Below, piece after piece: positions 34 through 37,745 of a stretch of DNA of 37,745 bases. Made by a program: the position numbers and the translations under genes. The DNA is from Macrostomum lignano (Eukaryota): positions 197,069 to 234,813 of the forward strand of contig NIVC01001808.1 in assembly GCA_002269645.1 (NCBI GenBank). Direction: 5' to 3'. The notes beneath the pieces were generated by a model. It was not told where the DNA came from and did no database searches. It saw only the letters and a program-made list of their open reading frames with translations. The first letter of the stretch is position 1. Every line of letters starts with the position of its first letter.

Positions 34-275
34 CTGCTTGGACTCTAGGAAGCTAAGCGCAGTTCTGACATTGCTGAGGCAATGCACCCGCTGCATATTG
101 CCCCGGTTCTCCTTCTGCAGCTTGTTGCCAGACAGGACCTCCAGCAGTAGTAGCAGCCTGGTGCCATCCTTGATCTCCGTGAACAGATCGCTGATCTTGC
201 AGGGCGGCTGGCAAGTGATGAGATAGGTGTTAATCCAGTTGGTGAATGTCTTCTTCTGAACTCGTTCCTGCTCAT
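34..275 (-). CDS. SYNE1: Nesprin-1/Msp-300-like protein, exon encoding the first calponin-homology (actin-binding) domain; the gene continues off the left edge
   Basis: Translation (D)EQERVQKKTFTNWINTYL...DLFTEIKDGTRLLLLLEVLSG...HCLSNVRTALSFLESKQ is a nesprin/Msp-300-type CH1. Acceptor ttccag| at 276 (phase 1), donor |gtgagg at 33 (phase 0). Confidence 0.9.
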
Positions 276-1150
276 CTGGAATGATTTTGGGTGTTGGCAG
301 AATTGGAGGACATGCCACATTAAATTTGCAATTGAGTATAAGTTGATACCTCTTAAACTCTTCACATTGGTCATAAGGCTTGATCGCCTCATGTCTGAGC
401 AGCTGAGCTGGGCCTTTCTTTAGGCCCTTCAAGTCAATAAATAGGCAAATTAATTGGGAAAATTGTGTCTTTAAAGTGCCTGATAAGCTGTTGCTTGGAG
501 ATTCGAATTCCAAGAAAATGTTAGACAAATAAAATCCGGAGAGAGGGCGAGAAACCGCTACCGAAGCTCGGGGGCCTCTCGGTGTCGCTTACTCTAATTC
601 AATAACAACAAAAGTTTTAATAGCAAGCGAGGGGGAGGGTGCAAAGCAAAAGAAGACAAGACGGTCCATCCAGTGAGCAGCTCGGCCGCAGTGCAGCCAC
701 CCCATAGTAGAAAAGGCAACAAACTGTCAAATAAAATGCCGCAAACCCGTCTATTTATTCATTTGTGCAGAGTACCTGAGTGGATAGAGATTCGGGTCAG
801 GGCGAAAGAGCAAAGCGAATTGCTGGGGAAGGTTGGCTCACCCTTAACATCACAAATTCTAATTCGATATTCATTAGGGCAGTCTTCATTACACTTCGAA
901 CTTAATACAAAGTATATTCTTTCATCATTTAAGCATACTTTTTAATACAAAACTTACATTTCTTCAGAAAATGTTTATCTATAATTCACTAGTCGAAAAG
1001 GTCACTCGGTGCACACTCTTCGAGTCATCAGAGAGGCTAAGGGGATTACATAATCAAATTTTACATTCTGACACTTTTTAGTAGGGTCTATAAGACCTTA
1101 AGCTTATGTATTTAATAGAGTCGAAAAATCCTGCCGATGAACCTTCTTAC

Positions 1151-1685
1151 ACCGGAAAATAACAATAGCTGCATCGATCACATCCGTGATGTCGACTCCG
1201 TCTGCATCCGAACTGTTGGCTGCAACCTCTGAGGCATTCTCTGACGTCGTTACTTTAGGGACAGCCTTGCTAACCGGTGTCATTGGTTGCAGCTTGACCT
1301 GCGACATCGCCAATGACGGTCGAAGAATCCACTGAGACTCTGCCCGATGTTTGCCCTCATCGGCATCGGCTACCGCAGGACTCGCGTCTTCGGGGAAGTC
1401 AAACAGCTCCAAAGCGATGGAGTCAGAATCGGCAAGAGATTCCTGCGAACGTTGCGTCAGCAGCTCCTGGCTGTGATCTGACTCTTGGCGATGCTGCCGC
1501 CGAGTGTCGTCCCACGCGAAGGCATTGAGCCAGCTGGCCTGGAACAGGGCCAGCCCGGTGCGGCCATCCGCAGACCGACCCAGGACTCTGCTGACGGGGG
1601 CATTTGACTCAGCGGGCTCGGCAACGGGCTCAGCGAGCGATCTACTTCGCGGACGTTGGCGCTCATGTCTGTGTTGTTGCGTCAT
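1151..1685 (-). CDS. Candidate alternative first coding exon A of the nesprin-like gene (178 codons, MTQQH...VIDAAIVIFR)
   Basis: ATG at 1685 with an in-frame stop shortly upstream. Ends CGG T|gtaaga (phase 1), joining the CH1 exon in frame as ...IFR-Y-EQERVQKK. Confidence 0.65.
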
Positions 1686-2079
1686 TTCCTCTTTTGCGGC
1701 ATAGAATTTTGCCTTCCGGACTCAGAAGCCTTCAACCATTGACTACGACTCACACGAACGCCTCTTCAGTTCTTTCCCTTTCTCTTCACTGCATGTCTCT
1801 TTCTCAGTTCTAACGCGCGCTTTCATTCTAATTCTGCGGCAGTCCGGTACACGGTTTTTGGACAGTGTGGGTGTACGGTATAAGGATTGTGACGTGCTCA
1901 CCAAATGCTGCATAATTAATCCTCGATGCACTTGATGAGTTTGGAAGTGACTGACCGCATGGCTGGCTTTGCCAGGCGGTGAATCAGAGGCGGGTGAATA
2001 AATACGTAAGGAAGACAGCAGGGCCGAAAAAGTCCCAACTAGTAGCAGTTCTGCTCGAAATCCCAAATCTTTTTCTCAC

Positions 2080-2212
2080 CTTTAAAGCCGAGAATTCTCT
2101 CCCCGAAAATGCTCCGTCTGGGCTCTGCACTGGTGCAGCTCTGGCTAGCTGCTGCATCTTGAGATTCAGGCGATTCTTTGCCAATTGAACTGTTAGCTTC
2201 ATTGTCTGCCAT
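2080..2212 (-). CDS. Candidate alternative first coding exon B of the nesprin-like gene (MADNEANSS...RILGFK)
   Basis: ATG at 2212. Ends AAA G|gtgaga (phase 1), giving ...GFK-D-EQERV. Confidence 0.6.
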
Positions 2213-2642
2213 GCTTTCACCAGTCAATTGTATGGTACGTTGTATAAGTATAGCTAGTACTAGGCCCCTTGTACTCAGTCGCTTTGCTGAGACGTCGTTT
2301 CTTTTTAATTTTTTATTTAACCCTACTATTTTATATACATTCTTTTGGCTTTCCACTCACCGAAAGGTCTAGTTTGGATCAGAAATCTATAGATAAGGTG
2401 CAATCTTGCTAACTAACTACTTAACGAGCTATCTACACTGCACGTGTCAATTTCAGCCATGAATTTTCCTGCGTTTTTAATTGAACCTCCGTTTCGGCTA
2501 AAACAGCATGTCGCTCATACACGGAGACAGGTCGAACTATGTACTATTAATCTGGCTGTCATAGAAGTCAGTTTAAATTTAGAATTTGCAGCAATGCCCT
2601 CTAATGGAGACATGCAGTTGAACAACTGTTGCCCGGTCTCAC

Positions 2643-2868
2643 CTCGGTAGAAGAGCGCCCGGGCCTCAACAAGGCTGGTGCTGCCCTCTTGCTGCTGCTT
2701 AGCCAGCCAGTGAGGCTGCATGGCAGGTGTGTCCGGGATCAAGCTTGAGCTGGTATCGATCGCTATTTTACTCCCCAATGAGTGGCGGAGTGCTTGACTT
2801 TTGCTTGACAAGGCACTGTCAGGCAACACCGAACTAACGGAGCCAGAAATTAGGCACACCTGTGTCAT
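2643..2868 (-). CDS. Candidate alternative first coding exon C of the nesprin-like gene (MTQVCLIS...ARALFYR)
   Basis: ATG at 2868 with TAA two codons upstream. Ends CGA G|gtgaga (phase 1), giving ...LFYR-D-EQERV. Confidence 0.6.
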
Positions 2869-2979
2869 AGCTTACACACGTTGGCAATATAAACGCCACA
2901 GCAGATGTGCCAAAAGCTTGGCAAGTTGATTTGCAATTCTGATTTTCTTCCTTCGTTTAGCAACCGCAGTCACTGCTCG

Positions 2980-2982
<3 letters not shown>

Positions 2983-3012
<30 letters not shown>
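2983..3012. repeat. (TC)15 microsatellite
   Basis: Read directly from the sequence. Lies about 115 nt upstream of candidate exon C. Confidence 0.95.
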
Positions 3013-3015
<3 letters not shown>

Positions 3016-3684
3016 CCAAACCAAAATGCCCAGGTCTCTATATCTCAGCTCTCTGTCAGTTCATGGCCGCCCCGATCTCAGCTGTTGAAAGCAATTATGC
3101 GCCAGCTCAGTTTGGGGAGGCGGCTGAGAGATGCGGCCGGAAGTATAAACTGGGTGGGTGAATGGGTCGCTATGCAGTCGCCCGGTTGAAAGCGGCTTTC
3201 GCAGGAAGATTGAGAGAGAGAGAGAGGGGGGGACGAGATGAAGAAGAGGTGATCCAGTTTCATTGGCAGTTCAGCATCTCCTGCTTAGTGCAGAGTTTGC
3301 CAGAACCGAAGTAACAGGGTTGATGAATCCCATATACAAAAAATAAAGCGGGATAGGGTATAGAATACATTGATCTCTTTACCTATCTCTAGCCTCTTGC
3401 TCGTAACTAAGGTACTTCTTCAATCGTTTCGTATCGAGCATAAAATTGGCCTTAAAAAGGCTACTAAAAAATGATGCCTTTTTACACAATGAATGAGAGC
3501 TTAAGCACGGCAATTTCAAATTCGCGAGCCAAATTGCAGGCTCATTAATGTCGGGAGAGTGCATCGCTATCATTCAACACTGCAGTCTCACTAGCTGATT
3601 GGCTCCACCCAGTCTGTCTGAACTGATCTTCTGCTTAGAAGCGCTCAAGCTACTTTAAAGTGGACTCCAAAATCTTCTGAACTA

Positions 3685-5312
3685 CCCAAATCCTTCCCAA
3701 TATACCAAATCCTTCAAAATATACCAAATCCTTCACAATATACCAAATCCTTCAAAATATACCAAATCCTTCACAATATACCAAATCCTTCCCAATATAC
3801 CAAATCCTTCCCAATATACCAAATCTTTCACAATATACCAAATCCTTCAAAATATACAAAATCCTTCACAATATACAAAATCCTTCACAATATACAAAAT
3901 CCTTCACAATATACAAAATCCTTCACAATATACAAAATCCTTCATAATATACCAAATCCTTCACAATATACCAAATCCTTCACAATATACAAAATCCTTC
4001 ACAATATACCAAATCCTTCACAATATACAAAATCCTTCACAATATAAAAAATCCTTCACAATATACCAAATCCTTCACAATATACCAAATCCTTCACAAT
4101 ATACAAAATCCTTCACAATATACAAAATCCTTCACAATATACAAAATCCTTCACAATATACAAAATCCTTCACAATATACCAAATCCTTCACAATATACA
4201 AAATCCTTCACAATATACCAAATCTTTCACAATATACCAAATCCTTCACAATATACCAAATCCTTCAAAATATACCAAATCCTTCACAATATACCAAATC
4301 CTTCACAATATACCAAATCCTTCCCAATATACCAAATCTTTCACAATATACCAAATCCTTCAAAATATACAAAATCCTTCACAATATACCAAATCCTTCA
4401 CAATATACAAAATCCTTCACAATATACCAAATCCTTCCCAATATACCAAATCCTTCCCAATATACCAAATCTTTCACAATATACCAAATCCTTCCCAATA
4501 TACCAAATCCTTCAAAATATACCAAATCCTTCACAATATACCAAATCCTTCAAAATATACCAAATCCTTCACAATATACCAAATCCTTCCCAATATACCA
4601 AATCCTTCCCAATATACCAAATCTTTCACAATATACCAAATCCTTCAAAATATACAAAATCCTTCACAATATACAAAATCCTTCACAATATAAAAAATCC
4701 TTCACAATATACAAAATCCTTCCCAATATACCAAATCCTTCCCAATATACCAAATCTTTCACAATATACCAAATCCTTCAAAATATACAAAATCCTTCAC
4801 AATATACAAAATCTTTCACAATATACCAAATCTTTCACAATATACCAAATCCTTCACAATATACAAAATCTTTCACAATATACCAAATCTTTCACAATAT
4901 ACCAAATCCTTCAAAATGTACCAAATCCTTCACAATATACCAAATCCTTCAAAATATACAAAATCCTTCACAATATACCAAATCCTTCACAATATACAAA
5001 ATCCTTCACAATATACAAAATCCTTCACAATATACCAAATCCTTCACAATATACCAAATCCTGCACAATATACCAAATCCTTCACAATATACAAAATCCT
5101 TCACAATATACCAAATCCTTCACAATATACCAAATCTTTCACAATATACCAAATCTTTCACAATATACCAAATCCTTCACAATATACCAAATCTTTCACA
5201 ATATACCAAATCTTTCACAATATACCAAATCCTTCAAAATATACTAAATCCTTCAAAATGTACCAAATCCTTCACAATATACCAAATCCTTCAAAATATA
5301 CCAAATCTTTCA
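3685..5312. repeat. 19-bp minisatellite, consensus CCAAATCCTTCACAATATA, about 85 copies
   Basis: Period of 19 read directly. Variant units include CCC/AAA/TTT substitutions. The + strand is almost devoid of G. Confidence 0.97.
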
Positions 5313-5853
5313 GATTCCTAAACCTGATGAGGCTGCCAAAAAGCCAGAAAAAGTAAGCTAAGGACGCTTTTTGCTTCCGTCTCCCAAGTTTCATACACCC
5401 CATTCAGCTATTTCTCTTTTTTATATGCTTTTGTCTCGCAAACTTCTGTCTCTGGATCCTGCCGATTCCATGCAAGGAACTTGCAGCATCTCATGAAAAG
5501 GACGGGTATTGGTATAGAATTTCATGCGCATCATTGATAAACTGGTAATGGCGACGCCTTCTCTTTCCTTTCCTTAGCGAAAAATTGCCATCCGTCTTCT
5601 CTCCGTTCAGGCTCAACACAAAATCTAAAGCCGTAGCTGGATAACTCAGCCCTCGATTCTGCGCTATACGACTCCTCCCAATAACAAGGTGGAGCTGACA
5701 GCCATCTTACAGCACCCTTTAAATCTTCTAAAGCATAAACCAAGAATATTAATTTAGTTCTGCAGTTCAATACAAAGTTATAGTGTGTAAAATAGTAAAC
5801 ACCAGATGCCCCCCGCCCGCTTTATTGAGTCAGTAGACTCAATGGGTCGCTAT

Positions 5854-6005
5854 CATAAACCCGAAAAATCACAACTCCGAAAGCACTTCCCATCACAAAC
5901 CCGAAATATCATAACTCCCGAAAACCAAAATAGCATTGCCCAATCATAAATTCCCGAAATACCACAAACCCGAGATATCACAAGCCCGAAATATCATAAC
6001 TTCGA
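5854..6005. repeat. Degenerate short tandem repeat (approximately ATCAYAAACCCGAAA units)
   Basis: The motif CCCGAAA flanked by ATCA(C/T)AA recurs several times. Confidence 0.6.
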
Positions 6006-6171
6006 AAGTTCTAGCAATGTCCAACATTATTTTGTTTTTCGGAGTTGATAAGTCGGGTTTATGATTACACATACACATACAATAGCCACCTTCAGAGCAA
6101 ATTGACGGATGTAAAGGTCGGCAAACTCCGCTAGTACAATTCGAGACGCTCAAGTTGGTGCAGTGTCACTT

Positions 6172-6340
6172 GCTCCTCCCTCCTCTGTCCTCCCGAACTT
6201 TCTTAATCTTTATTTTCCATTCACTCCTCTCCTTCTCCTCTCCTCCCTCTTCTCTTCTCCTCTCCCTTCTCCTCTCCTCTTCTCTCACTTCTCTCTTCTC
6301 TCCTCTATTCTCCCTTCTCTTCTCTATCATCATCTCTCAC
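6172..6340. repeat. CT-rich low-complexity polypyrimidine tract
   Basis: Almost pure C/T (CTCCT/TTCTC units) on the + strand. Confidence 0.85.
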
Positions 6341-6496
6341 CTCTAATCTGTTTTCCTACATACTCTGACTGCCAGCGCTGACCAGCAGCCATAAGCTGAA
6401 TTATCTGCCTCTTAGCCCTTAAGGTTCAAATGGTTGCCGACCCACAGAACTAGGATACAGAGAATGTTGTCTCGGTCTCAACTAAATAAAACTCAC

Positions 6497-6530
6497 TCTT
6501 AAGCTTCCAGACAGTCAGCCCGATGTTCAT
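6497..6530 (-). CDS. Candidate alternative first coding exon D of the nesprin-like gene (MNIGLTVWKLK)
   Basis: ATG at 6530, in-frame TGA upstream. Ends AAG A|gtgagt (phase 1), giving ...KLK-N-EQERV. Short, so chance is harder to exclude. Confidence 0.4.
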
Positions 6531-7480
6531 CCTTGCAAAGGCTGCCCGAATTCGATGACCGACGTTGTTAGCCGCTCATCCAGCCAGGCTGCACTTCCCG
6601 CTCAACCGGTGGGACTTCCGGGATGGCGGATAACTCAATAAATGAACTGCAGAAGCAATAGCATCCCAGAGCGTCTATAACTTCATTTCAATGGTTCTTT
6701 CGCTTTGCCTTTCCTTTGCTATCAAAGCGAGTAAGCTGAGGTGCGCTGAGCCGAGCGTGCGGGATGATGGGATTGGTTAGGATTGATGAGGAAGGAAGAT
6801 GCGCTAAACCAAGGCGTTTTTCATTGACTGAAGAGCAGCGGGGATGCTGAGCAATGCATCATCCTCAGCTAGAGGGGAGGGGATTGTAAAAAAACAATCA
6901 AATAGGAAACGGGAGAGCTGGATTTTTGTTTCGATTGCTTCCAAAAAGAATGCACGTTATTGTCCCCTTGCCGGCAACCACCATGCCTTATTGGATGGGA
7001 CTGCAGAGGCTGTTGAGAACCAGGAAACGGCAGGTGTACGCGAGGATTTTTCATCCTCAGCGTGACCTGAGCTGCACTAGGCATGCGTAGGCAGGGGATC
7101 CACCTCATGCCTCAGTTGTCATACGGCTAATTATTCTAAACAATGCAACACCCAATGCAAATGTCATAAAGTTGCAGTAAAAATATTTTCCATATACAGT
7201 TTCATGGGCGTCCACTGTAGCCTATCTTTTTACGGCGTAATGCCATTGGATCGTAAAAATGGGAAAAAGGAAGTTCTGGTCTGAAAGCATGCTGTCGGAG
7301 TGATTGGCGAAGTGAATCAATTCAAAAGAAGTTGAAAACCCCAGTGAAAAACAACAAATTGACTGAATAACTGCCTGCAATTTTTCTAGAGTCTCCGGTC
7401 TGAGTAATATAACTGCTCGATGCAAAATTATACCTATTTTAGTTGCTACGGGCAAACTTGGTTACGCTTCGTCGCCTCAC

Positions 7481-7616
7481 CACGAAGTGAATTTCTCACG
7501 CCGTCGCGACTTTTGATGTCAACTCTGCCGCGACCTGCCGCTTGTGGCGGCTGCACCAGCGCTGATGCTCGGCGCCTTTGATGACTCAAAGCCGCATCCG
7601 TCGCCTCGGCAGCCAT
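7481..7616 (-). CDS. Candidate alternative first coding exon E of the nesprin-like gene (MAAEATDAALS...GVRNSLR)
   Basis: TAG TCG ATG G start context, 45 GC-rich codons. Ends CGT G|gtgagg (phase 1), giving ...SLR-D-EQERV. Too short to appear in the ORF track. Confidence 0.55.
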
Positions 7617-8326
7617 CGACTATTCTAGCCGCGCTGCGGGTTTAGCTCCTTGACGCCAAATTTTTTTTCTACTTTGGCAGGATTCGCCTAGTTGCCCCGG
7701 GAGTTGAGACTGGCAGCAGCAGGCCTTGGCTTGGCTGTCTTGAGTCCAGGTGGAAATAATATGAGGAGAGTGGGCTAGATGGAAGTTAGGATGCACTATA
7801 GAAGTCAGCTTTAGCCGAGCGCAAGCGCCCACATGTACGAATGCGCCTAGAGCGGCGCAGCTCATGGTAGTTGAACAGTGAATTGTTTGCTAAGCCCGTC
7901 ATTTGCTTACATTCGCCCGTTCTCTCTTTGTCACTCTCGCTTGGTTTACTCACTCAAAGCATTTCGAGCACACAGTCACGTCGAATATGCTGGCAGCGCA
8001 GCTTTCTATACTTGTTAAGCAAGAGGAAAACTTGTTAAACCAACTATTTTGCTACGATCGTTGTAAGCCAGACGCAGAGAATGTCAAAGGGACAATCAAG
8101 CAGTCTTCTTTATTTCTTCGTTTGAAATACTCGTAATTATGACAAGTCGTTTTTATTTGAGGGGGTCGACTTTACTAAGGTAAAGTGCCGTCTATGTATA
8201 TATACAGTAAAGTGTAGGAGTATTGCTTGAAGAGCAGTGGAAACGCATTATTGGGTGGTATGCTGCCTGCGAACGTATTTATTACTTATAACAAGCGACA
8301 TTAAGAGGTCATTTTTACAAACTTAC

Positions 8327-8579
8327 TATTGAACATTTTACGCTCGTATTTTGTATAAAAATTATCTACGTGTACACAGGAAAAGGGAAGTTGAGCCATA
8401 GAATTTTGCCTGAAATATTGCAAAGCACACTTGTAACACAGTAGTCCCAGTAAGGTTTCCGAACATGAAAACCATGCAGAAACACTCAGACTCAATACTG
8501 AAAAACTTTTAGCATCTGCAGTCATGAATAATCCACTCGGCGGATTTTCTTTTGGTACGTTGGACGTGCTGTCTCGCAT
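8327..8579 (-). CDS. Candidate alternative first coding exon F of the nesprin-like gene (MRDSTSNV...YERKMFN)
   Basis: ATG at 8579, in-frame TAA upstream. Ends AAT A|gtaagt (consensus donor, phase 1). Confidence 0.45.
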
Positions 8580-8720
8580 CAGAAGCCGGTGAGAGAGTTG
8601 ATAACGTACTTAGAGCTTACATGCATAAGGCTTATTTAATTCTTAAAAGCACATTCTCGGGAGTCAGTTGGGTTGATCTTCTAATTAGAACGGCCAACAG
8701 AAATTGTGAAAATCACCTAC

Positions 8721-9110
8721 ATGCGTCCAAAAAATCAATATAACTACTGCTCCTTCACCCACAGCACGTTCAAAATAGAAAAAAACGTGTCTCAACAACG
8801 GATCGAGCTTGTTGTGTCATTCTGCATCAGGAATGAGAAAAACTTTGAAATATATCGCATGCTCCGTGAGCACATGCTTCTGAGCGACTTCTACATTAAC
8901 ATGGAATCCAAGATGGACCTGTGGTACGCTTTCGAAATCGAGATGAACGGCACGCTAATATTTTCTGCCATCGAACTGCCTGACGGGTACAGGGACAACC
9001 TGAACCTGCAAGTTCTGGTCCGAGAGCTGACTTTTGTCATTGACGAGTACAAGAGAAGCAACCAGATCGTTCATATGAAGTATAGCCTCAATAAATGCAC
9101 CCTGCTCTGA
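8721..9110 (+). CDS. Orphan ORF, 129 aa (MRPKNQYNYCSF...NKCTLL), unknown function; possibly exon 1 of a small spliced gene extending to 10536
   Basis: Non-repetitive ORF with many C/G-ending codons (TTC TAC ATT AAC ATG GAA TCC AAG ATG GAC CTG TGG TAC) in an AT-rich neighbourhood. No family recognised. Confidence 0.5.
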   Translation: MRPKNQYNYCSFTHSTFKIEKNVSQQRIELVVSFCIRNEKNFEIYRMLREHMLLSDFYINMESKMDLWYAFEIEMNGTLIFSAIELPDGYRDNLNLQVLVRELTFVIDEYKRSNQIVHMKYSLNKCTLL

Positions 9111-22976: not shown

Positions 22977-23937
22977 CTTGCCTCCCTCCCTCCCTGTCCG
23001 TCTGTCTGTCCCTCCATCCGTCTGTCTGTCCGTCTGTCGTTAGTTAAGAACTTTAGTGAGTGACGGAAAGCGTAAGATACTTGATTCAAAAATTTTAAAT
23101 ATGTTACTATGCAATGCATAAATAAATAATAACAAATTTGCAAAGAAAACAAAAATCTATGAATTAAAGTATGTAACAAACTGATGCACAATGAAGAGCA
23201 AGCAAAGCTTTTTATCAATTTCGATTTAAGAGTTATAAATGTACCAGCTATACTACTCTCCGTAAGTTTAACGCAAATTGTTTGCTTTTTGTATTTTTAC
23301 TAACCAGAAACTTTTCACAATAATTTCGTAATCTTCTTAGCTTAGAAGAAAAATGCGATAGAATGGCACTTTAGTCAATGCTATCTGTTTGAAAATCAGG
23401 AAATTGACTCACGAGTAAAAGGTCGCGGGTTCGATTCCCAATCCCACTCGGAATAATTTGTGTCCTTGATGGTCTGGCGACCCCCGTGCGCAGCCTTCAG
23501 ATGCGCCGCGCAACAGCTGCGGCTGAGCTGTCGGTCGCACATCTGGCCATGAAGACAGGTGTAATAGGTTTAATCAATAATAATTATCATAAATCATAAC
23601 TGTCCTTTCTTTAAACTTTAACCCCCCCCCCAGACGCGGCTACGCAGAGTACCGCCAGCTGCTGCGCGACGCTCTTGACGCGGTGAACGCGGCCCGGCAG
23701 CCGTTTGTCGACCTGTTCGAAGCCGAACGCCTCGCCATTGAGGAGGCCAGAAAGCAGCGCGAAGCCGAGGCTGCGGCTGCCGAGGCGGCCAAAGCGGCCG
23801 CTGCCGAGGCGGAAAAAGCGGCCGCCGCTGAGGCTGGCGACGGCGAGGCCGACAACTCGGACTCTGTAAAGCCGGATGAGGCGGAGATATCCGAGGTCGA
23901 GGGCGGCAAAGAGTGGGCCGTGGTTGATGCTGTTTAA
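15080..23937 (+). CDS. CCAR1: CCAR1/DBC1-family protein (cell division cycle and apoptosis regulator 1-like), 9 exons, 929 aa as modelled; additional 5' exons possible
   Basis: Exons 15080-15316, 16103-16435, 17125-17447, 17651-17960, 18640-18956, 20618-20923, 21394-21655, 22519-22916, 23634-23937. All introns GT-AG, phases consistent, total 2790 nt. Domains: S1-like (HGTITKLFEKFGYVNDDIFF), DBC1/Nudix-like (YSAKVMLLS...LGGPWSPSVDG...WYKFMELHYYR...ETVTYFLPDVW), SAP (MKVADLRRELESRGRDSRGLKAQLVARL), EF-hand-like (CEFFDRDRTG), C-terminal coiled coil. Confidence 0.92.
15420..16019. repeat. 40-bp minisatellite in CCAR1 intron 1 (GAAGATTATAAATACCCTCTATGATGCTAGGGTTGGACCT)
   Basis: Homogeneous 40-bp period from about 15655 to 16019, with degenerate copies upstream. 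Confidence 0.95.
16625..17060. repeat. 16-18-bp minisatellite in CCAR1 intron 2 (TGTAGCTGGCGCCCTCTC)
   Basis: Read directly. Explains the spurious RQLQR/CSWRP ORFs. Confidence 0.93.
17460..17567. repeat. (TCTG)n microsatellite in CCAR1 intron 3
   Basis: Read directly. Confidence 0.95.
17985..18578. repeat. 22/24-bp minisatellite in CCAR1 intron 4 (GTAGCTACCAGT[GT]ACCAGGTGGT)
   Basis: Read directly. Two unit lengths differing by GT. Confidence 0.95.
19546..19720 (-). pseudogene. P-element transposase remnant
   Basis: Reads KFPPEVRRFASTLHYYSPKAYKYVRKFFQLP / HPSSLRKWISSV / PGFCVQALQEL across two frameshifts. Matches the F-x-x-TL-x-(F/Y)YSPKAY...LPHP..L.KW...PGF motif of P-element/THAP9 transposases. 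Confidence 0.8.
20030..20087. repeat. (TTCAA)n microsatellite inside the P element
   Basis: Read directly. Confidence 0.85.
20307..20520. repeat. About 28-36-bp minisatellite (CTCCCAGATCCTCAGTTGCTGGGGCCAGTCAC), about 7 copies, in CCAR1 intron 5
   Basis: Read directly. Starts immediately after the P-element TSD. Confidence 0.88.
21039..21385. repeat. 21-bp minisatellite in CCAR1 intron 6 (GATTATCGGTTTAGAATGTGA and variants)
   Basis: Period 21 (AGATTATCGG at 21061, 21082, 21103). Runs up to the acceptor at 21393. Confidence 0.92.
21665..22472. repeat. (AGT)n trinucleotide array with AGC/GGT/GGA/GCGTT interruptions, filling CCAR1 intron 7
   Basis: Read directly. Source of the artefactual poly-Val and poly-Leu ORFs. 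Confidence 0.97.
22945..23040. repeat. (TCTG)n-type microsatellite in CCAR1 intron 8
   Basis: Read directly. Confidence 0.85.
23406..23590 (+). mobile_element. Truncated, internally deleted copy of the SINE at 28606
   Basis: Shares GACTCACGA...GGTTCGATTC...TGTGTCCTTGA and GCAGCCTTCAGATGCGCCGCGCAA(C/T)AGCTGCGGCTGAGCTGTCGGT with 28606-28906. The central domain is deleted. Confidence 0.85.
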
Positions 23938-24051
23938 TTGACTTTTTTTCTGCAACATTTTGCTTGTGGAACGACTGTTTAGTGTTGTGCTACTGACATT
24001 TTTTTCGTTTTACGATTGAATTATTAAAACTGTTGGCTTGCAATTCTTATC

Positions 24052-24057
24052 AATAAA
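24052..24057 (+). promoter_or_regulatory. Candidate polyadenylation signal of the CCAR1-like gene
   Basis: AATAAA about 115 nt after the stop codon. Confidence 0.5.
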
Positions 24058-25371
24058 CAGTGCGTCAAGCTTCTTACGACTATTATGTAATTCTTTTCTT
24101 CAAGTTTGTTTGCATTATCAACCGTAGGCTTAGCGACTGATTAACTTAAATAAGTTTGATAGCAACATTCTGGCATCGGATGTTTCAGCATTCAATACCT
24201 AAATAACTCTCTACTCCAATTTTGTGTCATAGTCATTGTTAGTTAATAAGAAATTCACTCTGGTAATAATCTTTGCTGTTTTTATATAAGCCGGTGGTTA
24301 TATAATAAAAGTAAATAACTAAAGCATTTTGTTCTGACAAAAGACCTGTCAGATTAGCTTTTGGTAGTTGCTACCCAGCAGCTGTGAAATAAAGCAGTGA
24401 TAGCTTGTTTGTTTGTTATTCTTTAACTGCACTAATCTGTGAAAATGTTGCAAAATCATTTTCAAGGGGTTACAACATATTTGTAAAATTTTACAATTAA
24501 ATTACTCCTTAAATTACTCGTACGAAGAAGCATGAGTGTTAGCTTTTTTAAATGTATGAAGAATCCTATAGATTTATCTCAGGGAACACTGCTTCAAACA
24601 ATGAATTTAACCCCTGATAGTGACAGATGCAGTGGGCGAATACATGTATATGTACATAAATTGAGTTTTAAAAGTCTACATAGAAATTGGTACTTTGATT
24701 TTCTGATTCCAATTTCTGATTGTAAGAAAAGCTGCATTTTGTATGAAATTTATTTCGCTCAAAATGTTAAGAATTTTATTGTCTTAATTAGAAAAAACTC
24801 AAGGACTTTCTCTACCCTAAGCTTGCTTAATTAGCTTGGTAAAAACTCGGTCCTTATAAGGCCTTTGAATTGCGTCATTTTGAAGAAACAAATCTCCCAT
24901 TTTAACAAATGAAAGCTTGAAGTGCTTCAGATGTTCGGTATAACAAGTAAATTTGTTAGCTAACTCTATAATTTGAGTTATATTTTAGAAATAATTTCTT
25001 GGCTTTGTATGTACATAGTTGCTTGTAAAAAAGGCCCCTAAAATTTAACTTTTATTAAAGCGCCGCATTTTTTACTACAGAGCCTTGCATGCATGCCATC
25101 AAGTCCAAGTTGTGCGAACGGGAACATAGAAAGTATTTAGCCTCAATTTCACAAATTTCACAAGTCCTGTAAGTGTCAATGTATAATAGTCTATAATAAA
25201 TTTACTTAGATTAAGATGCTGCATTAATTTCTCTAACTTTTTATTACAGCTAATATAATCCTAGTTTCCCGCGTTAAATTATTTTGAGTTAAAATATCAA
25301 CTCAATAAGTTAAAAGAAGTTAGTCCATAGCAGTCAATAGTCCGCTGAGCTCACTAAATGGTATAAAATGC

Positions 25372-26130
25372 TATATTATAGCTCTATATTTTATTCTACA
25401 AAATTCAGTCGCTATCTATCACCATAATAAAATTAGACTTGCGACTTTAAATTTTCCAAGTTTCATACCAGAGCAAATTTTGATTAATTGCATTTTAATT
25501 AAAGCGAATAGCATTATAAAGTATTAGCTGGGCATGGCTATCAAGTGTTGACTTTGGCCTATTCAGTATTCTTCTAGAGTTAATCAAAGTTTATAATTAG
25601 CCTCTAGTCTCAATCCCTACTTCTAATGCAAGTATAAACAAAATTACTTATACTATAGCTTTATAGTTATCAAATTATCATTTTTTGTAATAATCTATTA
25701 TAAAATATTAAAATTTTTATATATTAATGGCCTAACTATTATTATTGGGATAGACCTATTCATTATCCTACAATAAACTAAGATTTTTAGAAAGCAACTA
25801 AGTTTTAGAAAACCTTGAGTTTCCAATAATATAATTATTCACAATAGCAACTATCCTGACATGATAAAAGTTTTTAAATAGTTAAAAAGCTGATAAATTG
25901 ATATTGGTAATATAGTTTATAATATTATTTGTCATTACTTAAAGACATTCTTTTCATTATTATAGTCATGATTATATTAGTATTATTTTTATTAATCTAA
26001 ATCTAAGCTATACTTATATTATAGCTCTATATTTTATTCTACAAAATTCAGTCGCTATCTATCACCATAATAAAATTAGACTGGCAACTTTAAATTTTCC
26101 AAGTTTCATACCAGAGCAAATTTTGATTAA
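25372..26130 (+). repeat. 116-bp direct duplication (25372-25487 and 26015-26130)
   Basis: Copies are offset by 643 nt. Two mismatches seen (GACTTGCGACT vs GACTGGCAACT). Confidence 0.9.
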
Positions 26131-26170
26131 CTTATCAACTAGACTAAATTGTGGACTGCCAATTGCAGCA

Positions 26171-28309
26171 ATGATTGCCGAATTCGAATTCGATGACACA
26201 GCCTTGAACTGGCCTGGATCATGGGGCAGCCCATCCGATCCTTCTGCTGACGGTTTTAGCGAAGAAGACGGCGTTTTTTCTGTAGTTTCCATGGCAACTG
26301 TAGATGAGGAAGAGTTTCCAGCGCCAGCGGATGCGTGCGAGGCGGCCGAGCTGGAGACAGCCCGGATGCGGCGGCTGGCGGATGCGAAGGCGAGGCAGCT
26401 GCAGGAGTTTCAAGTGAGAATTTACAGTTACGCTTGTATCAGGGCCGCTGTACACCCTCTGTCTGCGGTGCCTGCTCGGGGGGCCTCCTTGTTGACATCG
26501 GGTCTTTTATGTGTACATTTTGTCATTGTCTCGATCGATCGATTTCTTACTTCTCTCTTAATAACTAAAGAGCTCTTTGTGATTTATAGTTTATAAAAAA
26601 ACCTGCGCTCACCACAGGCTCGCGAAGCGGCCCGAGTTCGCGCCTATCGACGACTTGCCCGACTGCAGGCAGCCGCCAATGCCGGCTCCGCTGCCGCCGC
26701 CTCCGCTAGACGGGCAGCATCAGCATCGGGATCGTCAGCAGCTTCGCCGAGGTCGCAGCAGCCTCCTCCTGTAGACTGGGAGACGCTCCGCCAGTGCTGC
26801 CACCGGGAGACCCTCGCTGCTCGACGCGCCTTGGTCGGCAGGCGTCAGCCGGAGCCTTCGCTGCGGCGCCCGTTGGCAGGTCCGTTAAACAGCTTCGTCG
26901 ATGTCAATCATTGTTTCGGCAGCCCACAACAGCAGCAACTTGGCCAAGACCATCTGGCCGTCTCCGCCGCCTCCTCGACTGTCGATGGCAGGGGCGGCAG
27001 CGGAGGCGGTCGGCGCGGCTCCGCCACGCTGGCAACGTCGGCCGTCGTTGCCGCCGCAAAATTCGACGCCGCCAACGCGGCAGCCGCGGCCGAATCAGCG
27101 AGACGCCAGCGCGCCGCCCAGCGCTCCCTGTCGGCGCTGTCTGAGCGCGAATCGGCGCGTCGTTGGCGCCGTCGTCGAGAGGCCAGCGCCAGGGCGCGCC
27201 GGGTCAAAGCGGAGGGCGAGGCGATGGCGGCGGCCCGGCTGGCCGCGGACTGCGCAGTTCCGGCGAACGCCACCGCCTCGGACCCGGAGTGCGATGGCGA
27301 CGGCGGCAGAGTCAACGGAGACGAAGGAGGAGACGAGACCATAGCCAGCGTGACTGAGCTGACTCACACTGTGCTCACCCTGGCAACCACGGGTCGGGAC
27401 TGTCCGAACGGCATCGCGGCTGACCAGCCTGAGGAGGAACCGACGAACGGAGATGCGGATCGACCGAAAAACCAACTGCTTTTCCTGCAGAGCCTGCAGG
27501 TCAGTCAGCTTTTTCTTGCTCCGATTTTTTCTTAGAAATGGTTGCCTATACTCAAAAAGTAAACTTTTGTTTTATCATGGCTTACCGGTTTTACCGGAAA
27601 ACGCAATAATTTATTGAAATTCTCATAATTCTAGTTGATGTTCAGATAGAAATTATTGAACTACTTAAAAAATCACCCAAATCTCGTTAGTGTATTTTTC
27701 GTGTGATGCTAATCTTTCTTAGAAACCCAGATTTCCCGACCTACTTAAGCCGTCTTCGGTGTTGCTGAAGGTGTTGTGCCAGAGTGCCCGCAGCTATATC
27801 TGGCTGGTAAAGTGCATCATTAGGGTCACTGGCTATATCAGTGCAAGCGCTCTACACACCAAACCCCGCTACAGAAATCGTCCAACGGAGCCTCCGCCAG
27901 GTGGCATCGAAGGTCTTCACCGACCGCGCAGGCGTCCAATGCTTCTTCGACATCTTCCGGCTCGTCGCTGGACGATATCACCACAGCCGCCGACAAGACT
28001 GACAGTCGGGACTGCACAAGCGTCAGGGACTCGCAGAAGTGGCAGTGGCTGCTCAGCCGCTGCCAGCATCTCGGCCTCACCGTGCCCCCTCTCTGCCCCT
28101 GCAATCCATCAGCTGTGGACGCCTTCACCGGCTGCGATCCGTCTGGCTGCGCCCTGAACTGCATGTTCTACCGCAGGCCGCGGGCCCTGCTAGCAGCCGT
28201 GGCCGATTTTGTTCGCGCAGCCGATCCGACTTTTCCGCCGCCCGGCACCGACTGGTGGCTGCGTGAGGCGGCGCCCGCAGCGAAGGCTGCCGGCGTTGGC
28301 AAGATCTAG
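26171..28309 (+). CDS. CCDC15: CCDC15-like coiled-coil protein, 3 exons, 519 aa as modelled
   Basis: Exons 26171-26413, 26618-27499, 27875-28309; GT-AG, all phase 0. Arg/Ala/Glu-rich coiled-coil stretches. C-terminal LTVPPLCPC...GCALNCMFYRRPRA resembles the remembered CCDC15 motif LPPLC.C...CANNC.FY...RA. Start codon uncertain. Confidence 0.65.
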
Positions 28310-28605
28310 GACTTAAAGTTTGTTTTTTAAATTCACGAGATTGCCTACTGAGGAGTAGCAAGTGCAGAATATTTAGCGAGTGTTTTATTGTATTGTGTTC
28401 AAAAAAGTTGCTTTGCAATAATTAAGTATAACTTCAAGTGTGTGTCTGTGCTACGAAGCTCGTAAAAGTCCACTCAAGCAATGCGAATCGAATAATAACA
28501 CAATAATATCACTGGTTACCATGTTCATTCGAAACACAGCTTGGAAGGCTCGTACTTTGTAATTTAGTGTTTGAAAAGCCTGAAAAGTTCCAATCTAAGC
28601 TCTAA

Positions 28606-28906
28606 GGGGGTTGTAGCCTAGTGGTCAGAGCGTCGGACTCACGACTGAAAGGTCGGGGGTTCGATTCTAAACCCATTCGGAACAATTTGTGTCCTTGAGC
28701 AAGACACTTTAACTCTGCATTGCTTCAGTTCACCGAGCTGTAAAATGGGTGCCAGGATTAGTTGGGGTAACTGAGGGTGTGTGTGGCGACCCCCCAGTCC
28801 TTGGACTGAACAGCCGTACGCAGCCTTCAGATGCGCCGCGCAATAGCTGCGGCTGAGCTGTCGGTAGCATATCTGCTCATTAGAGCAAGTGTAGTCGATT
28901 ATTATT
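28606..28906 (+). mobile_element. tRNA-derived SINE with a CORE(MIR)-like central domain
   Basis: A box TAGCCTAGTGG (28614-28624), B box GGTTCGATTC (28658-28667). Central TGTGTCCTTGAGCAAGACACTT...CTTCAGTT...CTGTAAAATGGG (28688-28749) resembles the CORE domain. (ATT)n tail. A second copy lies at 23406. Confidence 0.85.
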
Positions 28907-29910
28907 AACCAGCTAGTAATTAGCTTCAGACTAGGGGAAGGCAAATGAAATCGGTGGGGCTCGAGCCCCGGACCTGAAATTTTACATTTTCTGTCCTGTG
29001 TCAAAGTGCATTTGCACTGCCACAACTTTTCTATCAAATTGTAAATTTGATTTTAGCTACGCATTGTCCAAGTGATTTTAATTTTTAGCTCAATACTTGT
29101 ATTAACAAGTGCTCGAATATTCCAACAGCCATCTGTAAATTGCATTGATTACATTTTACCGTCCATGAAACTGCTTTCTTGCGTGCCTAACTTTTGACCT
29201 AACATTTTGGCAGCTTTTTAGGAAGTGTAAATTATGAAATAAAACAAAATCCTAGCAATAATAATGAGTGCGATCGGTACAAAAGTAGAAACTAATTGGC
29301 TTTATTTCTGTAAAATTCCGTTTTTTAAAGAGAAACATTTGTTTTAATTCGAGCGAACTAAAATCGCGTCAATTTAAAAATAGAAATAGAGATCTATTGA
29401 AAATGCGAGCGAAATGATTAAAACAAACTCAAAGCAGGAAGTGATTAGTATATACACATTTCATACTACTTAGAATAAGTATACATTTCAACAAATAAGG
29501 CTTCTGTCCGCTAAACTACCAAAAAATAAGTCAGTTGAAGGGTTTTTGGACCGGGCATTTAAAGGCGCTATAATTATCGGGGTAAAGCTATTAAGTTCAA
29601 GTGTGCTCACTTGAATACGTATATCCTTGGAATAAATTTAACAAAAATTTCAGTATAAAATATCTTTAAAATGACGAACAATGAAGAGGTGAAGCTCTTT
29701 TGGAAAATTTCAACTGATTAATAGATAATAGAAAGCCTATATTGACCATTTGATAAGTTTAATGCGCAATTTTTATGTTAGTAGTGCGTTGTGAATAGTA
29801 TCGTTAATATTTTCTTGCAGAGAGTCTCAGATAAAATACTCTTGTGATTACAGCTATTTCCTCAACCATAGTTATGGGAATTTTTTGTCAATTGGTGGCC
29901 AATCTAGGTT

Positions 29911-35900: not shown

Positions 35901-37745
35901 TGGCTGCTGTTTCCAATACAGAAGCCGAGTAAGTCGCCGGCGAACAGGACGGCGTGTAGCGATTCACGTCGGTCACTGTCACTGTCACCACGACGCTGCC
36001 AGTTCTCGGCGTTGCCCCGCTATCGACAGCCGTGATAGTTAGCGAGTAGGAGCTGGCCGTTGGATAGTCCAAGCCTGAGACGAGCGTTAGCTTAGTGCAG
36101 CCAGTTAGCCTGCAATAGTTTAATGAATTTTAAATTATTTTTATTATACGAAGCGTGATACAATACGTCTATGTGTGTATATATATGGAAACTCTGACAT
36201 AACATCTTTGGCTAAATCGCCCCAAGACCAGCGGTGATGCGATCCTGCACATTCCGCTGACTCCTGAGCACAAGTGTACTGTACTCAGGCACGCAATTAT
36301 ACACACGCTCCCACAGGGTGTACAGCGGTCTTGACTTTCTATTTGTCAGACATGTACACTCTGCCTTCGGAGTTGATCCTCATGCGTGGAAATTGAAGCA
36401 AAAAATTTCCCCTGTCAAAACTTACCCAAAAGTGCCAGTAGGCGCTATCGAGCACGCAACTGTGCCGTCGGTTCCGTAGTCTTGGTCAACAACGCTAATA
36501 TCAGCAACGTCACCGATAGCCTGGGTTTCAGGCAAGGTAATGCTACTGCCAATCGGTATCGATACGACTGGAGTGTGATCGTTGGTTGTAGTGATGGTTA
36601 CGGAGAGGTTGGCTGTTGCTGTCCTGTAACTGCCAGCACCATTATTATCCAAGCACGTGACGATGAGCAGGTAGCTAAGCGGATGATTTTTGGCCTGTCC
36701 GGATCGATGGCCGTGTTCAGTTCGATGATTGTTGAGTTTGCGGAGTTTGTGCGGAACAAGCTAAGATCGTTGCCACTGGTGATCTGGCAGGTAATTATCG
36801 TGTTGGAGCTGTCTGGATCGGAAACAACCATCTGTTTCACCAGAGTTCCAGCGGCGGAATCTGAATTTCGGGTATTAAGTTTCAGTCATTTTTTTACTTG
36901 AAGCACTAGTGAATACTTTTGTCTTCATACGGTAATTTTTTGCATTGTATTTATCCAATTACCTTCGACAAGCGTCGCAGAGAATGGATCGCCAGTGAAC
37001 GTTGGGTCCAACTCATTGAAGTCCGTAACGTCAACCCGCACAGTCTGGATGATGCTGTTTGGAGTCCCAGTGGTGGGATTATCTCGCGCCTGTACAACGA
37101 AGTTGATGTAGGTGTAGGCTGGCGTCGCCTCTCGGTCAAGGATGCCTTTAGTCTTGACCTGCACCTGGCCAGAGCTGCTGGAGATATTAAATACGGAGCT
37201 GAGATCTACGCTGGTAGAGCCGTCCGTACCGGTTACTGAGGCCAGACTGTAGATCACCTGACCGTCTGGCCCGGAGTCGTAGTCAATAGCAACCGCGGTG
37301 AACACTGCGAATCCTTCGTCGGCATTCTCCGATACCGAGTTGATTGCGGTAGTGGCACTTATCCACGGTGGTTGAATGTCCCCAGACTGGTGGGCGAGGT
37401 TTCTTGGCAGCACGTGCACGGTGACTGTGACGGTCGCTGTGCGCTGCGCCGAGGCGGGTGTCGCGCTGTCGCGCACAGTGATCACCAGAGTTTTGGACGC
37501 GGCCGCCGCGGAATCGTACGTTAGAAAGGTTTTGTCAAGGACCTGGATAAGTCATGTGACCAATTATCAATATGAGTTGAATATAAATTGTGTTATTTTT
37601 TAAGCAAAACTTACTTGACTACCAGTGGTAGACGAAAGGGTCAGATTTCGCTGTGTCCCCCGACAGAAAAGAAGGCCAGTAGCTGGTTGTCACCCAGATC
37701 GGCATCGGTGCAAGGAATGCTTGCCACTAGGGTGGCTGCACTGTC
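29998..37745 (-). CDS. Large cadherin-repeat type I membrane protein (CDH23/Fat/Dachsous-like repeats, no EGF/LamG), 3' part; 5' end lies beyond the window; six apparent -1 frameshifts
   Basis: Exons 37615-37745 (partial), 36963-37542, 36426-36860, 35078-36109, 33633-34854, 32402-33542, 31933-32277, 31326-31847, 29998-31216, all GT-AG. About 18 EC repeats with xE, DxD, LD(Y/R)E and DxNDNxPxF motifs. Membrane-adjacent non-cadherin domain, TM segment (about 30358-30426), Gln/Asn-rich tail ending DVVIFEL. Exon total is 6627 nt; adding 6 restored bases gives 2211 codons. Confidence 0.93.

What the first reader, a model, noticed from the sequence alone, without database searches (positions are those of the whole stretch)
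34..8579. Battery of six alternative first coding exons feeding one nesprin CH1 exon (plectin-like architecture)
Seen: six separate minus-strand ATG-started segments (1151-1685, 2080-2212, 2643-2868, 6497-6530, 7481-7616, 8327-8579). Each has an in-frame stop upstream and ends in a GTRAG donor (gtaaga, gtgaga, gtgaga, gtgagt, gtgagg, gtaagt). All six are phase 1, which is what the CH1 acceptor at 276 needs. The junction peptides converge on hydrophobic+K/R before the CH start (IFR-Y, GFK-D, FYR-D, KLK-N, SLR-D; MFN-N is the exception) although the exons are otherwise unrelated. Established: plectin and the spectraplakins use many alternative first exons spliced onto a DERDRVQKKTF exon to target isoforms. 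Inference: this nesprin has a comparable multi-promoter N-terminal switch, producing leaders of 11-178 aa. I do not know such an extensive array for nesprins, but cannot check the literature.
Basis: partly seen in the sequence, partly recalled or inferred. Interest (0 to 1): 0.75.

Follow-up and report, generated by a model that had tools for sequence, protein, structure and literature searches.

The report
Possible alternative first exons, flatworm nesprin

Summary
All six segments exist exactly as described: ATG, upstream stop, GTRAG donor and phase 1, matching the CH1 acceptor at 277-276. The window is Macrostomum lignano (GCA_002269645.1). The gene is nesprin-like: the homeologous copy's 1914-aa model carries CH and Spectrin_SYNE1 domains.

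Against the reading:
- The RNA-seq-based GenBank models on all three assembled copies start at a seventh, proximal 43-nt exon (392-350, MRRSSLMTNVKSLR, donor GTATCA, 74-nt intron).
- No annotated or database protein contains any leader.
- The count alone is weak: 8 such candidates against 3.4 expected.
- Segment 6 (8579-8327) is destroyed by indels and stops in the homeolog.
- Segment 3 loses its phase there.

In favour:
- 6 of the 8 mechanical phase-1 candidates end in hydrophobic+K/R. Control candidates give 2 of 51, and 2000 shuffles never gave more than 3.
- The annotated proximal exon (SLR|D) and an unlisted candidate (6392-6341, QIR|D) show the same ending.
- That hydrophobic position aligns with beta-spectrin IKALA|DERE.
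- Segment 1's 193-codon ORF is improbable by chance (P=0.005).

Verdict: partly supported. A plectin-like set of alternative ATG exons is plausible for segments 1-5 plus 6392-6341. It is unproven without junction reads.

The parts
34..275 (-). CH1 exon (first part of calponin-homology domain 1): (D/N/Y)EQERVQKKTFTNWINTYL...SFLESKQ. Acceptor AG at 277-276, phase 1; donor GTGAGG at 33.
   Evidence: Pfam CH E=4.5e-11. 100% identical to the NCBI M. lignano protein BOX15_Mlig010703g3. Best PDB matches are the beta-spectrin, plectin and MACF1 actin-binding domains.
350..392 (-). Proximal first coding exon MRRSSLMTNVKSLR (43 nt, phase 1, donor GTATCA). A 74-nt intron (349-276) separates it from CH1.
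   Evidence: P0001 sequence. The gene ranges of copies A, B and C all begin at this ATG. It is identical in all three copies. Its tail aligns with beta-spectrin SRIKALA|DERE. No upstream ATG within 150 nt.
1151..1685 (-). Segment 1: 178-aa ATG leader ending IFR, donor GTAAGA, junction codon TAT (Y). The best-supported upstream candidate.
   Evidence: The 193-codon ORF has P=0.005 in shuffles. 0 differences from copy B over a 635-nt stretch. 5 substitutions and no indel against copy C, with the ORF intact. G-rich first and G-poor second codon position, as in coding sequence. Against: 4 upstream ATGs within 150 nt, no homolog, not annotated.
1754..1913 (-). Unlisted phase-1 candidate (53 aa, ends RRS, donor GTGAGT). 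Probably a chance ORF.
   Evidence: Found by the mechanical scan. Lacks the junction motif. Negative codon score. 3 of 3 substitutions against copies B and C are non-synonymous.
2080..2212 (-). Segment 2: 44-aa ATG leader ending GFK, donor GTGAGA, junction D.
   Evidence: ORF and donor intact in copies B and C, with 1-2 amino-acid changes. Carries the junction motif.
2643..2868 (-). Segment 3: 75-aa ATG leader ending FYR, donor GTGAGA, junction D. Intact in copies A and B, out of phase in copy C.
   Evidence: Copy C has a 16-nt deletion abutting the donor. That gives 210 nt, phase 0, and would frameshift CH1.
3686..5312 (.). 19-bp minisatellite (about 86 copies, consensus CCAAATCCTTCACAATATA). 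It lies inside what would be the long intron between segments 4-6 and CH1.
   Evidence: TRF score 2743. Array length differs between copies.
6341..6392 (-). Unlisted candidate leader MAAGQRWQSEYVGKQIR (17 aa, donor GTGAGA, junction D). It shows the same hydrophobic+R ending.
   Evidence: Mechanical scan. Identical in copy C. Lies beside purine-rich low-complexity sequence.
6497..6530 (-). Segment 4: 11-aa ATG leader MNIGLTVWKLK, donor GTGAGT, junction N.
   Evidence: Identical in copy C, but inside a 1.2-kb block with almost no A/C differences, so conservation is uninformative.
7481..7616 (-). Segment 5: 45-aa ATG leader ending NSLR, donor GTGAGG, junction D. The ending is the same as that of the annotated proximal exon (KSLR|D).
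   Evidence: ORF intact with one silent change in copy C. No upstream ATG in 150 nt.
8327..8579 (-). Segment 6: 84-aa ORF ending MFN, donor GTAAGT. Doubtful as a coding leader.
   Evidence: Four indels and stop codons in copy C. Negative codon score. 4 upstream ATGs. No K/R at the junction. A separate 149-aa GenBank gene model on the same strand has its 5' end at 8522 inside it.

Best explanation
The region is the 5' end of a Macrostomum lignano nesprin-like (SYNE/ANC-1/Msp300-type) gene.

Shown:
- One phase-1 acceptor (277-276) opens the exon that begins the CH1 actin-binding domain.
- A proximal 43-nt ATG exon (392-350) is spliced onto it across a 74-nt intron. This is the form in the RNA-seq-based annotation on all three assembled copies.

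Inferred from sequence statistics only:
- Several further ATG-containing exons upstream are alternative 5' coding exons.
- Each ends in a hydrophobic residue, then K/R, then one base before a GTRAG donor. Each can therefore splice directly to the same acceptor.
- Each then supplies the hydrophobic position of the short helix that precedes DEQERVQKKTF.
- The resulting proteins would share the actin-binding domain but differ in an 11-178-aa N-terminal leader, as in plectin.

Segment 6 is probably not one of them. Whether each exon has its own promoter is untested.
For: - Geometry verified.
- Nesprin-like identity: and for a distant orthologue with the same phase-1 intron.
- Proximal exon in the models of copies A, B and C.
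- Junction motif in 6 of 8 phase-1 candidates, against 2 of 51 controls. Shuffles never exceeded 3 in 2000.
- The motif is encoded by different codons: R by AGA, CGG, CGA and CGT; K by AAA and AAG. This points to the protein level.
- Beta-spectrin and plectin align into the leader tail, with hydrophobic residues at -2 and -5.
- 6 of the 7 GTRAG sites with the motif also have an in-frame ATG ORF. The figure for control site-phases is about 21%.
- The segment 1 ORF has P=0.005 and shows no difference from copy B.
- The motif-bearing exons have fewer substitutions than the surrounding sequence against copy C (11 against 18.5 expected). They have 0-1 indel against 4.4 expected.
- Upstream ATGs are depleted: 8 against about 18 expected.
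- GTRAG density on the sense strand is about twice that elsewhere in the window.
Against: - No transcript evidence was available for any upstream segment.
- The GenBank annotation was built from whole-animal RNA-seq. Per PMC5730564 it keeps alternative transcripts with distinct CDS. It shows only the proximal start on all three copies, and a longer-leader isoform would have been the recorded longest product.
- No leader matches any protein: a word search of 5.8 billion proteins and an exhaustive phmmer search of 1.84 billion representatives.
- Substitutions inside the leaders are mostly non-synonymous (about 7 to 4), so there is no protein-level constraint beyond the tail.
- Segment 3 is out of phase and segment 6 destroyed in copy C.
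- A/C divergence is patchy. There is a 1.2-kb nearly identical non-coding block, so low divergence is weak evidence.
- Segment 1 has four upstream ATGs.
- The hydrophobic+K/R pattern was defined after looking at the data.
Confidence: 0.5

Rival explanations
1. Only the proximal exon (392-350) is a real start. It has either its own promoter or a spliced-leader trans-splice site just upstream. The upstream ATG-ORF/donor combinations are then non-functional: chance ORFs, decayed pseudo-exons, or U1-type donor-like motifs enriched on the transcribed strand of a long upstream region or outron.
For: - All three annotated copies start at 392.
- 30-39% of M. lignano genes are SL trans-spliced.
- No leader occurs in any protein database.
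- About 3.4 candidates are expected by chance.
- Segments 3 and 6 are broken in the homeolog.
- There is no excess of synonymous change.
- A distant species also has a proximal phase-1 ATG mini-exon 112 nt upstream of its CH1 exon.
Against: This rival does not explain:
- the amino-acid-level hydrophobic+K/R convergence (6/8 against 2/51, encoded by varied codons);
- the association of that convergence with in-frame ATG ORFs;
- the 193-codon ORF of segment 1 (P=0.005);
- the depletion of indels and upstream ATGs.
Confidence: 0.33
2. The upstream segments are transcribed exons but not independent first exons feeding CH1. Possibilities:
- they are spliced in series as 5'UTR or uORF exons of one long transcript starting near 8522;
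- they splice in frame into an acceptor just before the proximal exon (CAG|AC ATG at 397-393 also accepts phase 1);
- segment 1 is a separate orphan gene.
For: - A 149-aa GenBank gene model on the same strand has its 5' end at 8522 and spans the whole region. This suggests sense transcription from far upstream.
- A phase-1 donor joined at 395|394 stays in frame with MRRSSL (read directly from the sequence).
Against: - Each segment has its own in-frame upstream stop and ATG.
- The tails mimic the proximal exon's own tail. That makes sense only if they abut DEQERV directly.
- The candidate acceptor before 392 does not fit the YTNCAG or CAG-rich consensus well.
- The 149-aa product could not be recovered and has no CH hit.
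Confidence: 0.12
3. The locus in this window is a redundant, truncated assembly copy (haplotig or duplicate). Whatever its exons look like, this copy does not make a nesprin.
For: - Window position 1 abuts a 2686-N scaffold gap.
- Beyond the gap lies an inverted 98.3%-identical copy of the same 5' region, itself truncated after the CH2 exon.
- The intact 1914-aa model is on another contig.
- The assembly is known to hold 180-312 Mb of duplicated blocks.
Against: This concerns assembly, not gene architecture. The same exons are present upstream of the intact copy C, except that segments 3 and 6 are damaged there.
Confidence: 0.05

Closest known systems
Plectin (PLEC): a dozen alternative first exons spliced into exon 2
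   Same: Many unrelated ATG-containing 5' exons are spread over several kb. All are compatible with one acceptor that opens the D-E-R/Q-x-R-V-Q-K-K-T-F start of CH1. Leaders are short and variable (PMC8468861; PDB plectin chains align from the junction).
   Different: In plectin each exon is proven by cDNA, has tissue-specific promoters and directs isoform targeting. Here there is no transcript evidence for any upstream exon. The protein is nesprin-like, not a plakin. Two of the six proposed exons are damaged in the homeolog.
Spectraplakins (dystonin/BPAG1, MACF1, Drosophila shot): N-terminal isoforms from alternative promoters
   Same: The logic is the same: alternative 5' exons precede a shared actin-binding domain. 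The MACF1 ABD is among the closest solved relatives of this CH1.
   Different: The isoform numbers (3-4) come from my own knowledge and were not checked here. The gene family is different.
Nesprin-1/2 (SYNE1/2) and Drosophila Msp300 isoform diversity
   Same: Same family. The family is known to use many alternative promoters, terminators and splice sites. Msp300 has at least 11 isoforms (PMC11230431). Nesprin-1/2 have multiple novel 5'UTRs (PMC3388047).
   Different: The documented nesprin-1/2 alternative starts are mostly internal (introns 14/15, 18/19 and so on). They give CH-less isoforms. They are not a battery of first coding exons upstream of CH1.
SL trans-spliced genes of M. lignano
   Same: The CH1 acceptor TTCCAG fits the trans-acceptor motif [T/C]TNCAG. 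About a third of the genes are trans-spliced.
   Different: The 35-nt SL ends in ATG. Joined at 275, that ATG is out of frame with CH1 (worked out from the sequence). The annotated models carry a cis-spliced proximal exon instead.

Membership tests
Nesprin / SYNE / ANC-1 / Msp300 family | N-terminal paired calponin-homology domains | tested here: met
   CH1 exon in the window: Pfam CH E=4.5e-11. CH1b and CH2 exons are seen in copy B, and its 222-aa model is marked PF00307.
Nesprin / SYNE / ANC-1 / Msp300 family | Long rod of SYNE-type spectrin repeats | tested here: met
   Not in the window. The 1914-aa model of homeologous copy C carries precomputed Pfam Spectrin_SYNE1 and Spectrin hits. The distant orthologue L004 has Spectrin_SYNE1 and Spectrin_Anc-1 hits.
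Nesprin / SYNE / ANC-1 / Msp300 family | C-terminal KASH domain | not testable with these tools
   The 3' end of the gene lies outside the window and outside all fetched loci.
Plectin-type battery of alternative first coding exons | Several ATG-containing exons upstream, each with a donor in the phase required by one common acceptor | tested here: met
   There are eight phase-1 candidates plus the annotated proximal exon. The count alone is marginal (P about 0.02). The junction motif is highly non-random.
Plectin-type battery of alternative first coding exons | Each exon actually spliced to the common exon (junction reads or cDNAs) | not testable with these tools
   No RNA data could be reached. 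The annotation supports only 350->275. No database protein carries an upstream leader.
Plectin-type battery of alternative first coding exons | Separate promoters or transcription start sites | not testable with these tools
   No CAGE or RAMPAGE data available. The only hint is a gene model whose 5' end lies at 8522.
Plectin-type battery of alternative first coding exons | Exons, ORFs and donors conserved in related genomes | tested here: inconclusive
   Only within-assembly copies were available (98.3% and about 96.5% identical). Segments 1, 2, 4, 5 and 6392-6341 are intact. Segment 3 is out of phase and segment 6 destroyed in copy C. No congeneric genome could be searched.
SL trans-spliced 5' end | SL-containing reads ending at an acceptor with no upstream cis donor | not testable with these tools
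   Only motif fit could be judged.

The most novel reading that the evidence does not exclude
A flatworm nesprin carries a plectin-style battery of seven or eight alternative first coding exons: the proximal exon, segments 1-5, 6392-6341, and perhaps others. All feed one CH1 acceptor. Each has converged on a hydrophobic-basic ending that completes the helix preceding the actin-binding domain. That would make N-terminal leader switching an ancient or convergently evolved way of targeting CH-domain cytolinkers, beyond the plakins.
Probability: 0.35. Interest if true: 0.5.

Novelty: new member of a known kind. Interest (0 to 1): 0.35.

Why it matters
If junction reads confirm it, this would be the first nesprin shown to diversify the N-terminus directly in front of its actin-binding domain by a multi-exon switch. 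So far that design is known from plectin and the spectraplakins, where the leaders decide where the protein docks in the cell.

M. lignano is transgenic-tractable, so leader-GFP fusions could test targeting directly.

The convergent hydrophobic-K/R ending would also mark a structural requirement at the CH1 N-terminal flank.

If it is not confirmed, the case is a caution. ATG-ORF plus GTRAG coincidences occur at about 3-4 per 8.5 kb per phase.

Tried and rejected
1. Protein homology for the leaders gave nothing. The concatenated six drew no hit, though the 8000-candidate figure may be a cap. The segment 6 ORF alone drew none. An exhaustive phmmer search with segments 1, 2, 3, 5 and 1913-1754 found 0 hits. 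Caveats: M. lignano read assemblies appear absent from the collection, and long isoforms could be hidden behind a cluster representative.
2. Pfam on the leaders found no domain.
3. Codon-usage log-odds trained on the window's cadherin and CCAR exons separated poorly. They tracked G+C: overlapping alternative-frame ORFs scored as well as segment 1.
4. Copy-to-copy divergence has limited value as a conservation test, because divergence is patchy.
5. Gene ID Mlig010703 and SYNE1 were not found in paper texts or in the held supplements.
6. The distant orthologue L004 offers only 2.7 kb upstream and shows no similarity to any leader.
7. I considered SL trans-splicing directly onto the CH1 acceptor as the source of the start codon. 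I rejected it because the SL's terminal ATG is out of frame.
8. I considered a dispersed-repeat or transposon origin for the leaders. No other copies exist in the window, and there are no Rfam or tRNA hits.
9. The product of the 149-aa gene model that starts at 8522 could not be recovered. L6 + CH1 + read-through would give 150 aa and a different range, so it is not that.

Full report
**Source and context**

The CH1 exon peptide is 100% identical to the NCBI protein 'hypothetical protein BOX15_Mlig010703g3, partial [Macrostomum lignano]' (P0001). The window is the last 37.7 kb of contig NIVC01001808.1 of assembly GCA_002269645.1.

Other features of the window:
- mariner-type transposase remnants on the minus strand, 11944-13920;
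- a CCAR/DBC1-SAP gene on the plus strand from about 15.1 kb;
- a FAT-like cadherin gene on the minus strand, 30-37.7 kb;
- an annotated 83-aa orphan gene on the plus strand, 8859-9110.

The region of the finding is therefore the 8.5 kb between the CH1 exon and the next gene.

**Assembly state**

- Window position 1 abuts a 2686-N scaffold gap.
- Beyond the gap lies an inverted copy (copy B) of the same 5' region, 98.3% identical. It continues into CH1b and CH2 exons and then also ends at the gap.
- A third copy (copy C, contig NIVC01001422.1, about 96.5% identical) carries an intact 1914-aa gene model with Pfam CH, Spectrin_SYNE1 and Spectrin hits.
- The published assembly is known to contain 180-312 Mb of such duplicated blocks (PMC5730564).
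- These copies supported the nesprin-like identity and served as the only available 'related genomes'.

**Observation check**

- Count: a mechanical scan for ATG-ORFs of at least 8 codons ending at GTRAG in phase 1 on the sense strand of 276-8800 yields 8. Markov-1 shuffles give 3.4 +/- 1.8 (P about 0.02). An in-frame upstream stop is trivially true of any ORF. The count alone would not carry the claim.
- GTRAG motifs: there are 21 in this 8.5 kb of sense strand, about twice the density of the rest of the window on either strand.

**What the annotation says**

- P0001 reads MRRSSLMTNVKSLR|DEQERV....
- Its first 14 residues come from a 43-nt ATG exon at 392-350. The donor is GTATCA and a 74-nt intron precedes the CH1 acceptor.
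- The models on copy B (222 aa) and copy C (1914 aa) begin at exactly the same ATG. The exon, donor and intron are identical or nearly so in all copies.
- According to the genome paper, this GenBank annotation derives from StringTie/TACO/TBONE assemblies of whole-animal RNA-seq. Alternative transcripts with distinct CDS were retained. Non-coding and repeat-overlapping transcripts were removed.
- The look-up tool records the longest product of a gene. An isoform with a longer leader on any copy should therefore have appeared, and none did.
- One unexplained item: a 149-aa model without Pfam hits, on the same strand. Its 5' end is at 8522, inside segment 6, and it spans the gap and copy B. I could not recover its sequence.

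**Database searches for the leaders**

- No leader has a Pfam domain.
- None matched anything in the word-indexed 5.8-billion-protein search.
- None matched in an exhaustive phmmer search of 1.84 billion representatives.
- This absence is weaker than it looks. The CH1 search found only the NCBI protein and no read-assembly proteins from this species. Clustering could also hide long isoforms.

**Evidence that several segments are nevertheless real**

1. Junction motif.
   - Of the 8 mechanical phase-1 candidates, 6 end in [FYLIMVW][KR]: FR, FK, YR, IR, LK, LR.
   - Among 51 equivalent candidates in the rest of the window (both strands, all three phases) only 2 do.
   - The background rate before any GT in this region is 7.5%.
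   - 2000 shuffles gave a mean of 0.14 and never more than 3.
   - The basic residue is encoded by AGA, CGG, CGA, CGT, AAA and AAG, so the convergence is at the amino-acid level.
- The pattern was defined after the data were seen.
2. Structural rationale. With the proximal leader attached, the HMMER alignment to beta-spectrin extends into the leader: TNVKSLR|DEQERV against SRIKALA|DEREAV. Hydrophobic residues align at -5 and -2. Plectin chain 3f7p aligns as RIA|DERD.
3. Start codons. 6 of the 7 motif-bearing GTRAG sites have an in-frame ATG ORF, against about 21% of control site-phases.
4. Segment 1.
   - Its 193-codon ORF is longer than 99.5% of shuffles.
   - It shows no difference from copy B across 635 nt, against 1.76% for the surrounding sequence.
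   - It shows 5 substitutions and no indel against copy C.
   - It has a coding-like G1-rich, G2-poor periodicity.
5. Pooled comparison with copy C. The motif-bearing exons have 11 substitutions against 18.5 expected. They have 0-1 indel against 4.4 expected.
6. Upstream ATGs. They have 8 in the 150 nt before their starts, against about 18 expected. Segment 1 is an exception with four.

**Evidence against particular segments**

- Segment 6 (8579-8327): four indels and stop codons in copy C; the lowest codon score; four upstream ATGs; N instead of K/R at the junction. I regard it as a chance ORF or part of another transcript.
- Segment 3: a 16-nt deletion abutting the donor in copy C, which is the copy with the intact gene. 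This changes it to phase 0. It is dispensable at best.
- 1913-1754: lacks the motif and changes three residues in three substitutions. It is probably chance.
- Within all leaders, non-synonymous changes are about as frequent as neutrality predicts. Only the tails and the reading frames look constrained.
- Divergence between copies is patchy. One 1.2-kb block (5621-6820), including simple repeats, has a single difference. The identity of segment 4 and 6392-6341 therefore says nothing.

**Mechanism proposed**

- One acceptor (TTCCAG|AT, phase 1) receives either the proximal exon or one of several distal ATG exons.
- The last exon base completes the D/N/Y codon.
- The last two full codons supply the hydrophobic-basic end of the pre-CH1 helix.
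- The rest of each leader (11-178 aa, unrelated, probably disordered) would be isoform-specific.
- Shown: the geometry, the proximal exon in annotated models, and the statistical convergence.
- Inferred: use of the distal exons, separate promoters, and any targeting role.

**Spliced-leader trans-splicing**

It is common in this species. Its 35-nt leader ends in ATG. Joined directly at 275, that ATG is out of frame with CH1. Trans-splicing could instead serve the proximal exon, which is part of the main rival explanation.

**Comparison and novelty**

- Plectin's twelve first exons spliced into exon 2 are the closest architecture.
- Nesprins are known for many promoters. The documented ones are mostly internal and give CH-less isoforms.
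- If confirmed, this is a new member of a known kind of arrangement, in a new gene family and phylum.
- It is an in-silico case, with the available transcript-based annotation pointing elsewhere. I therefore score interest at 0.35 and confidence in the partly real battery at about 0.5.

Noticed in passing
window 1 and L001 10393-20371: The window starts directly after a 2686-N scaffold gap. Beyond the gap lies an inverted, 98.3%-identical copy of the same nesprin 5' region, so the two copies face each other. Each is truncated at the gap. This is probably a haplotig or duplicate mis-join at the end of scaffold NIVC01001808.1.
   Followed up: partly
window 8522 (L001 1871; L002 9664): A GenBank gene model with a 149-aa product and no Pfam hit lies on the nesprin strand. 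It spans the whole region, the gap and copy B. Its sequence could not be recovered, and no counterpart is listed on copy C.
   Followed up: partly
window 3686-5312: A 19-bp minisatellite of about 86 copies (CCAAATCCTTCACAATATA), 93% matches. It has strong GC skew, and its array length differs between the three copies.
   Followed up: no
window 5621-6820: A 1.2-kb block, including purine-rich simple repeats, shows only one difference between copies A and C. Neighbouring stretches differ by 2-6%. This suggests gene conversion or an unrecognised constrained element.
   Followed up: no
window 8859-9110 (+): An annotated 83-aa orphan gene with no Pfam domain. It is encoded identically on copy C and lies head-to-head with the nesprin upstream region.
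   Followed up: partly
window 45-392 (-): An alternative frame stays open for 115 codons from the proximal ATG straight through the 74-nt intron and most of the CH1 exon (MRRSSLMTNVKSLRGINLY...). An unspliced transcript would therefore encode a different peptide.
   Followed up: no
window 11944-13920 (-): Mariner/Mos1-type transposase remnants: Transposase_1, DDE_3 and HTH_48 hits in separate ORFs, so the element is a degraded copy.
   Followed up: no
window ~15077-29000 (+): A CCAR/DBC1-type gene (S1-like, DBC1, SAP, LAIKA domains) divergent from the nesprin gene. It contains several tandem arrays, including an 808-bp GTA triplet run (21665-22472), plus 40-bp, 24-bp and 18-bp repeats.
   Followed up: no
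window 29998-37745 (-): A FAT/CELSR-like multi-cadherin-repeat gene that runs off the end of the contig.
   Followed up: partly
L004 2535-2725: A distant nesprin-like gene from a Logan assembly (SRR23372228, 33% G+C) has the same phase-1 intron before (N)EQERVQKK. It also has a 26-aa ATG mini-exon 112 nt upstream, so a proximal mini-exon may be the ancestral arrangement.
   Followed up: partly
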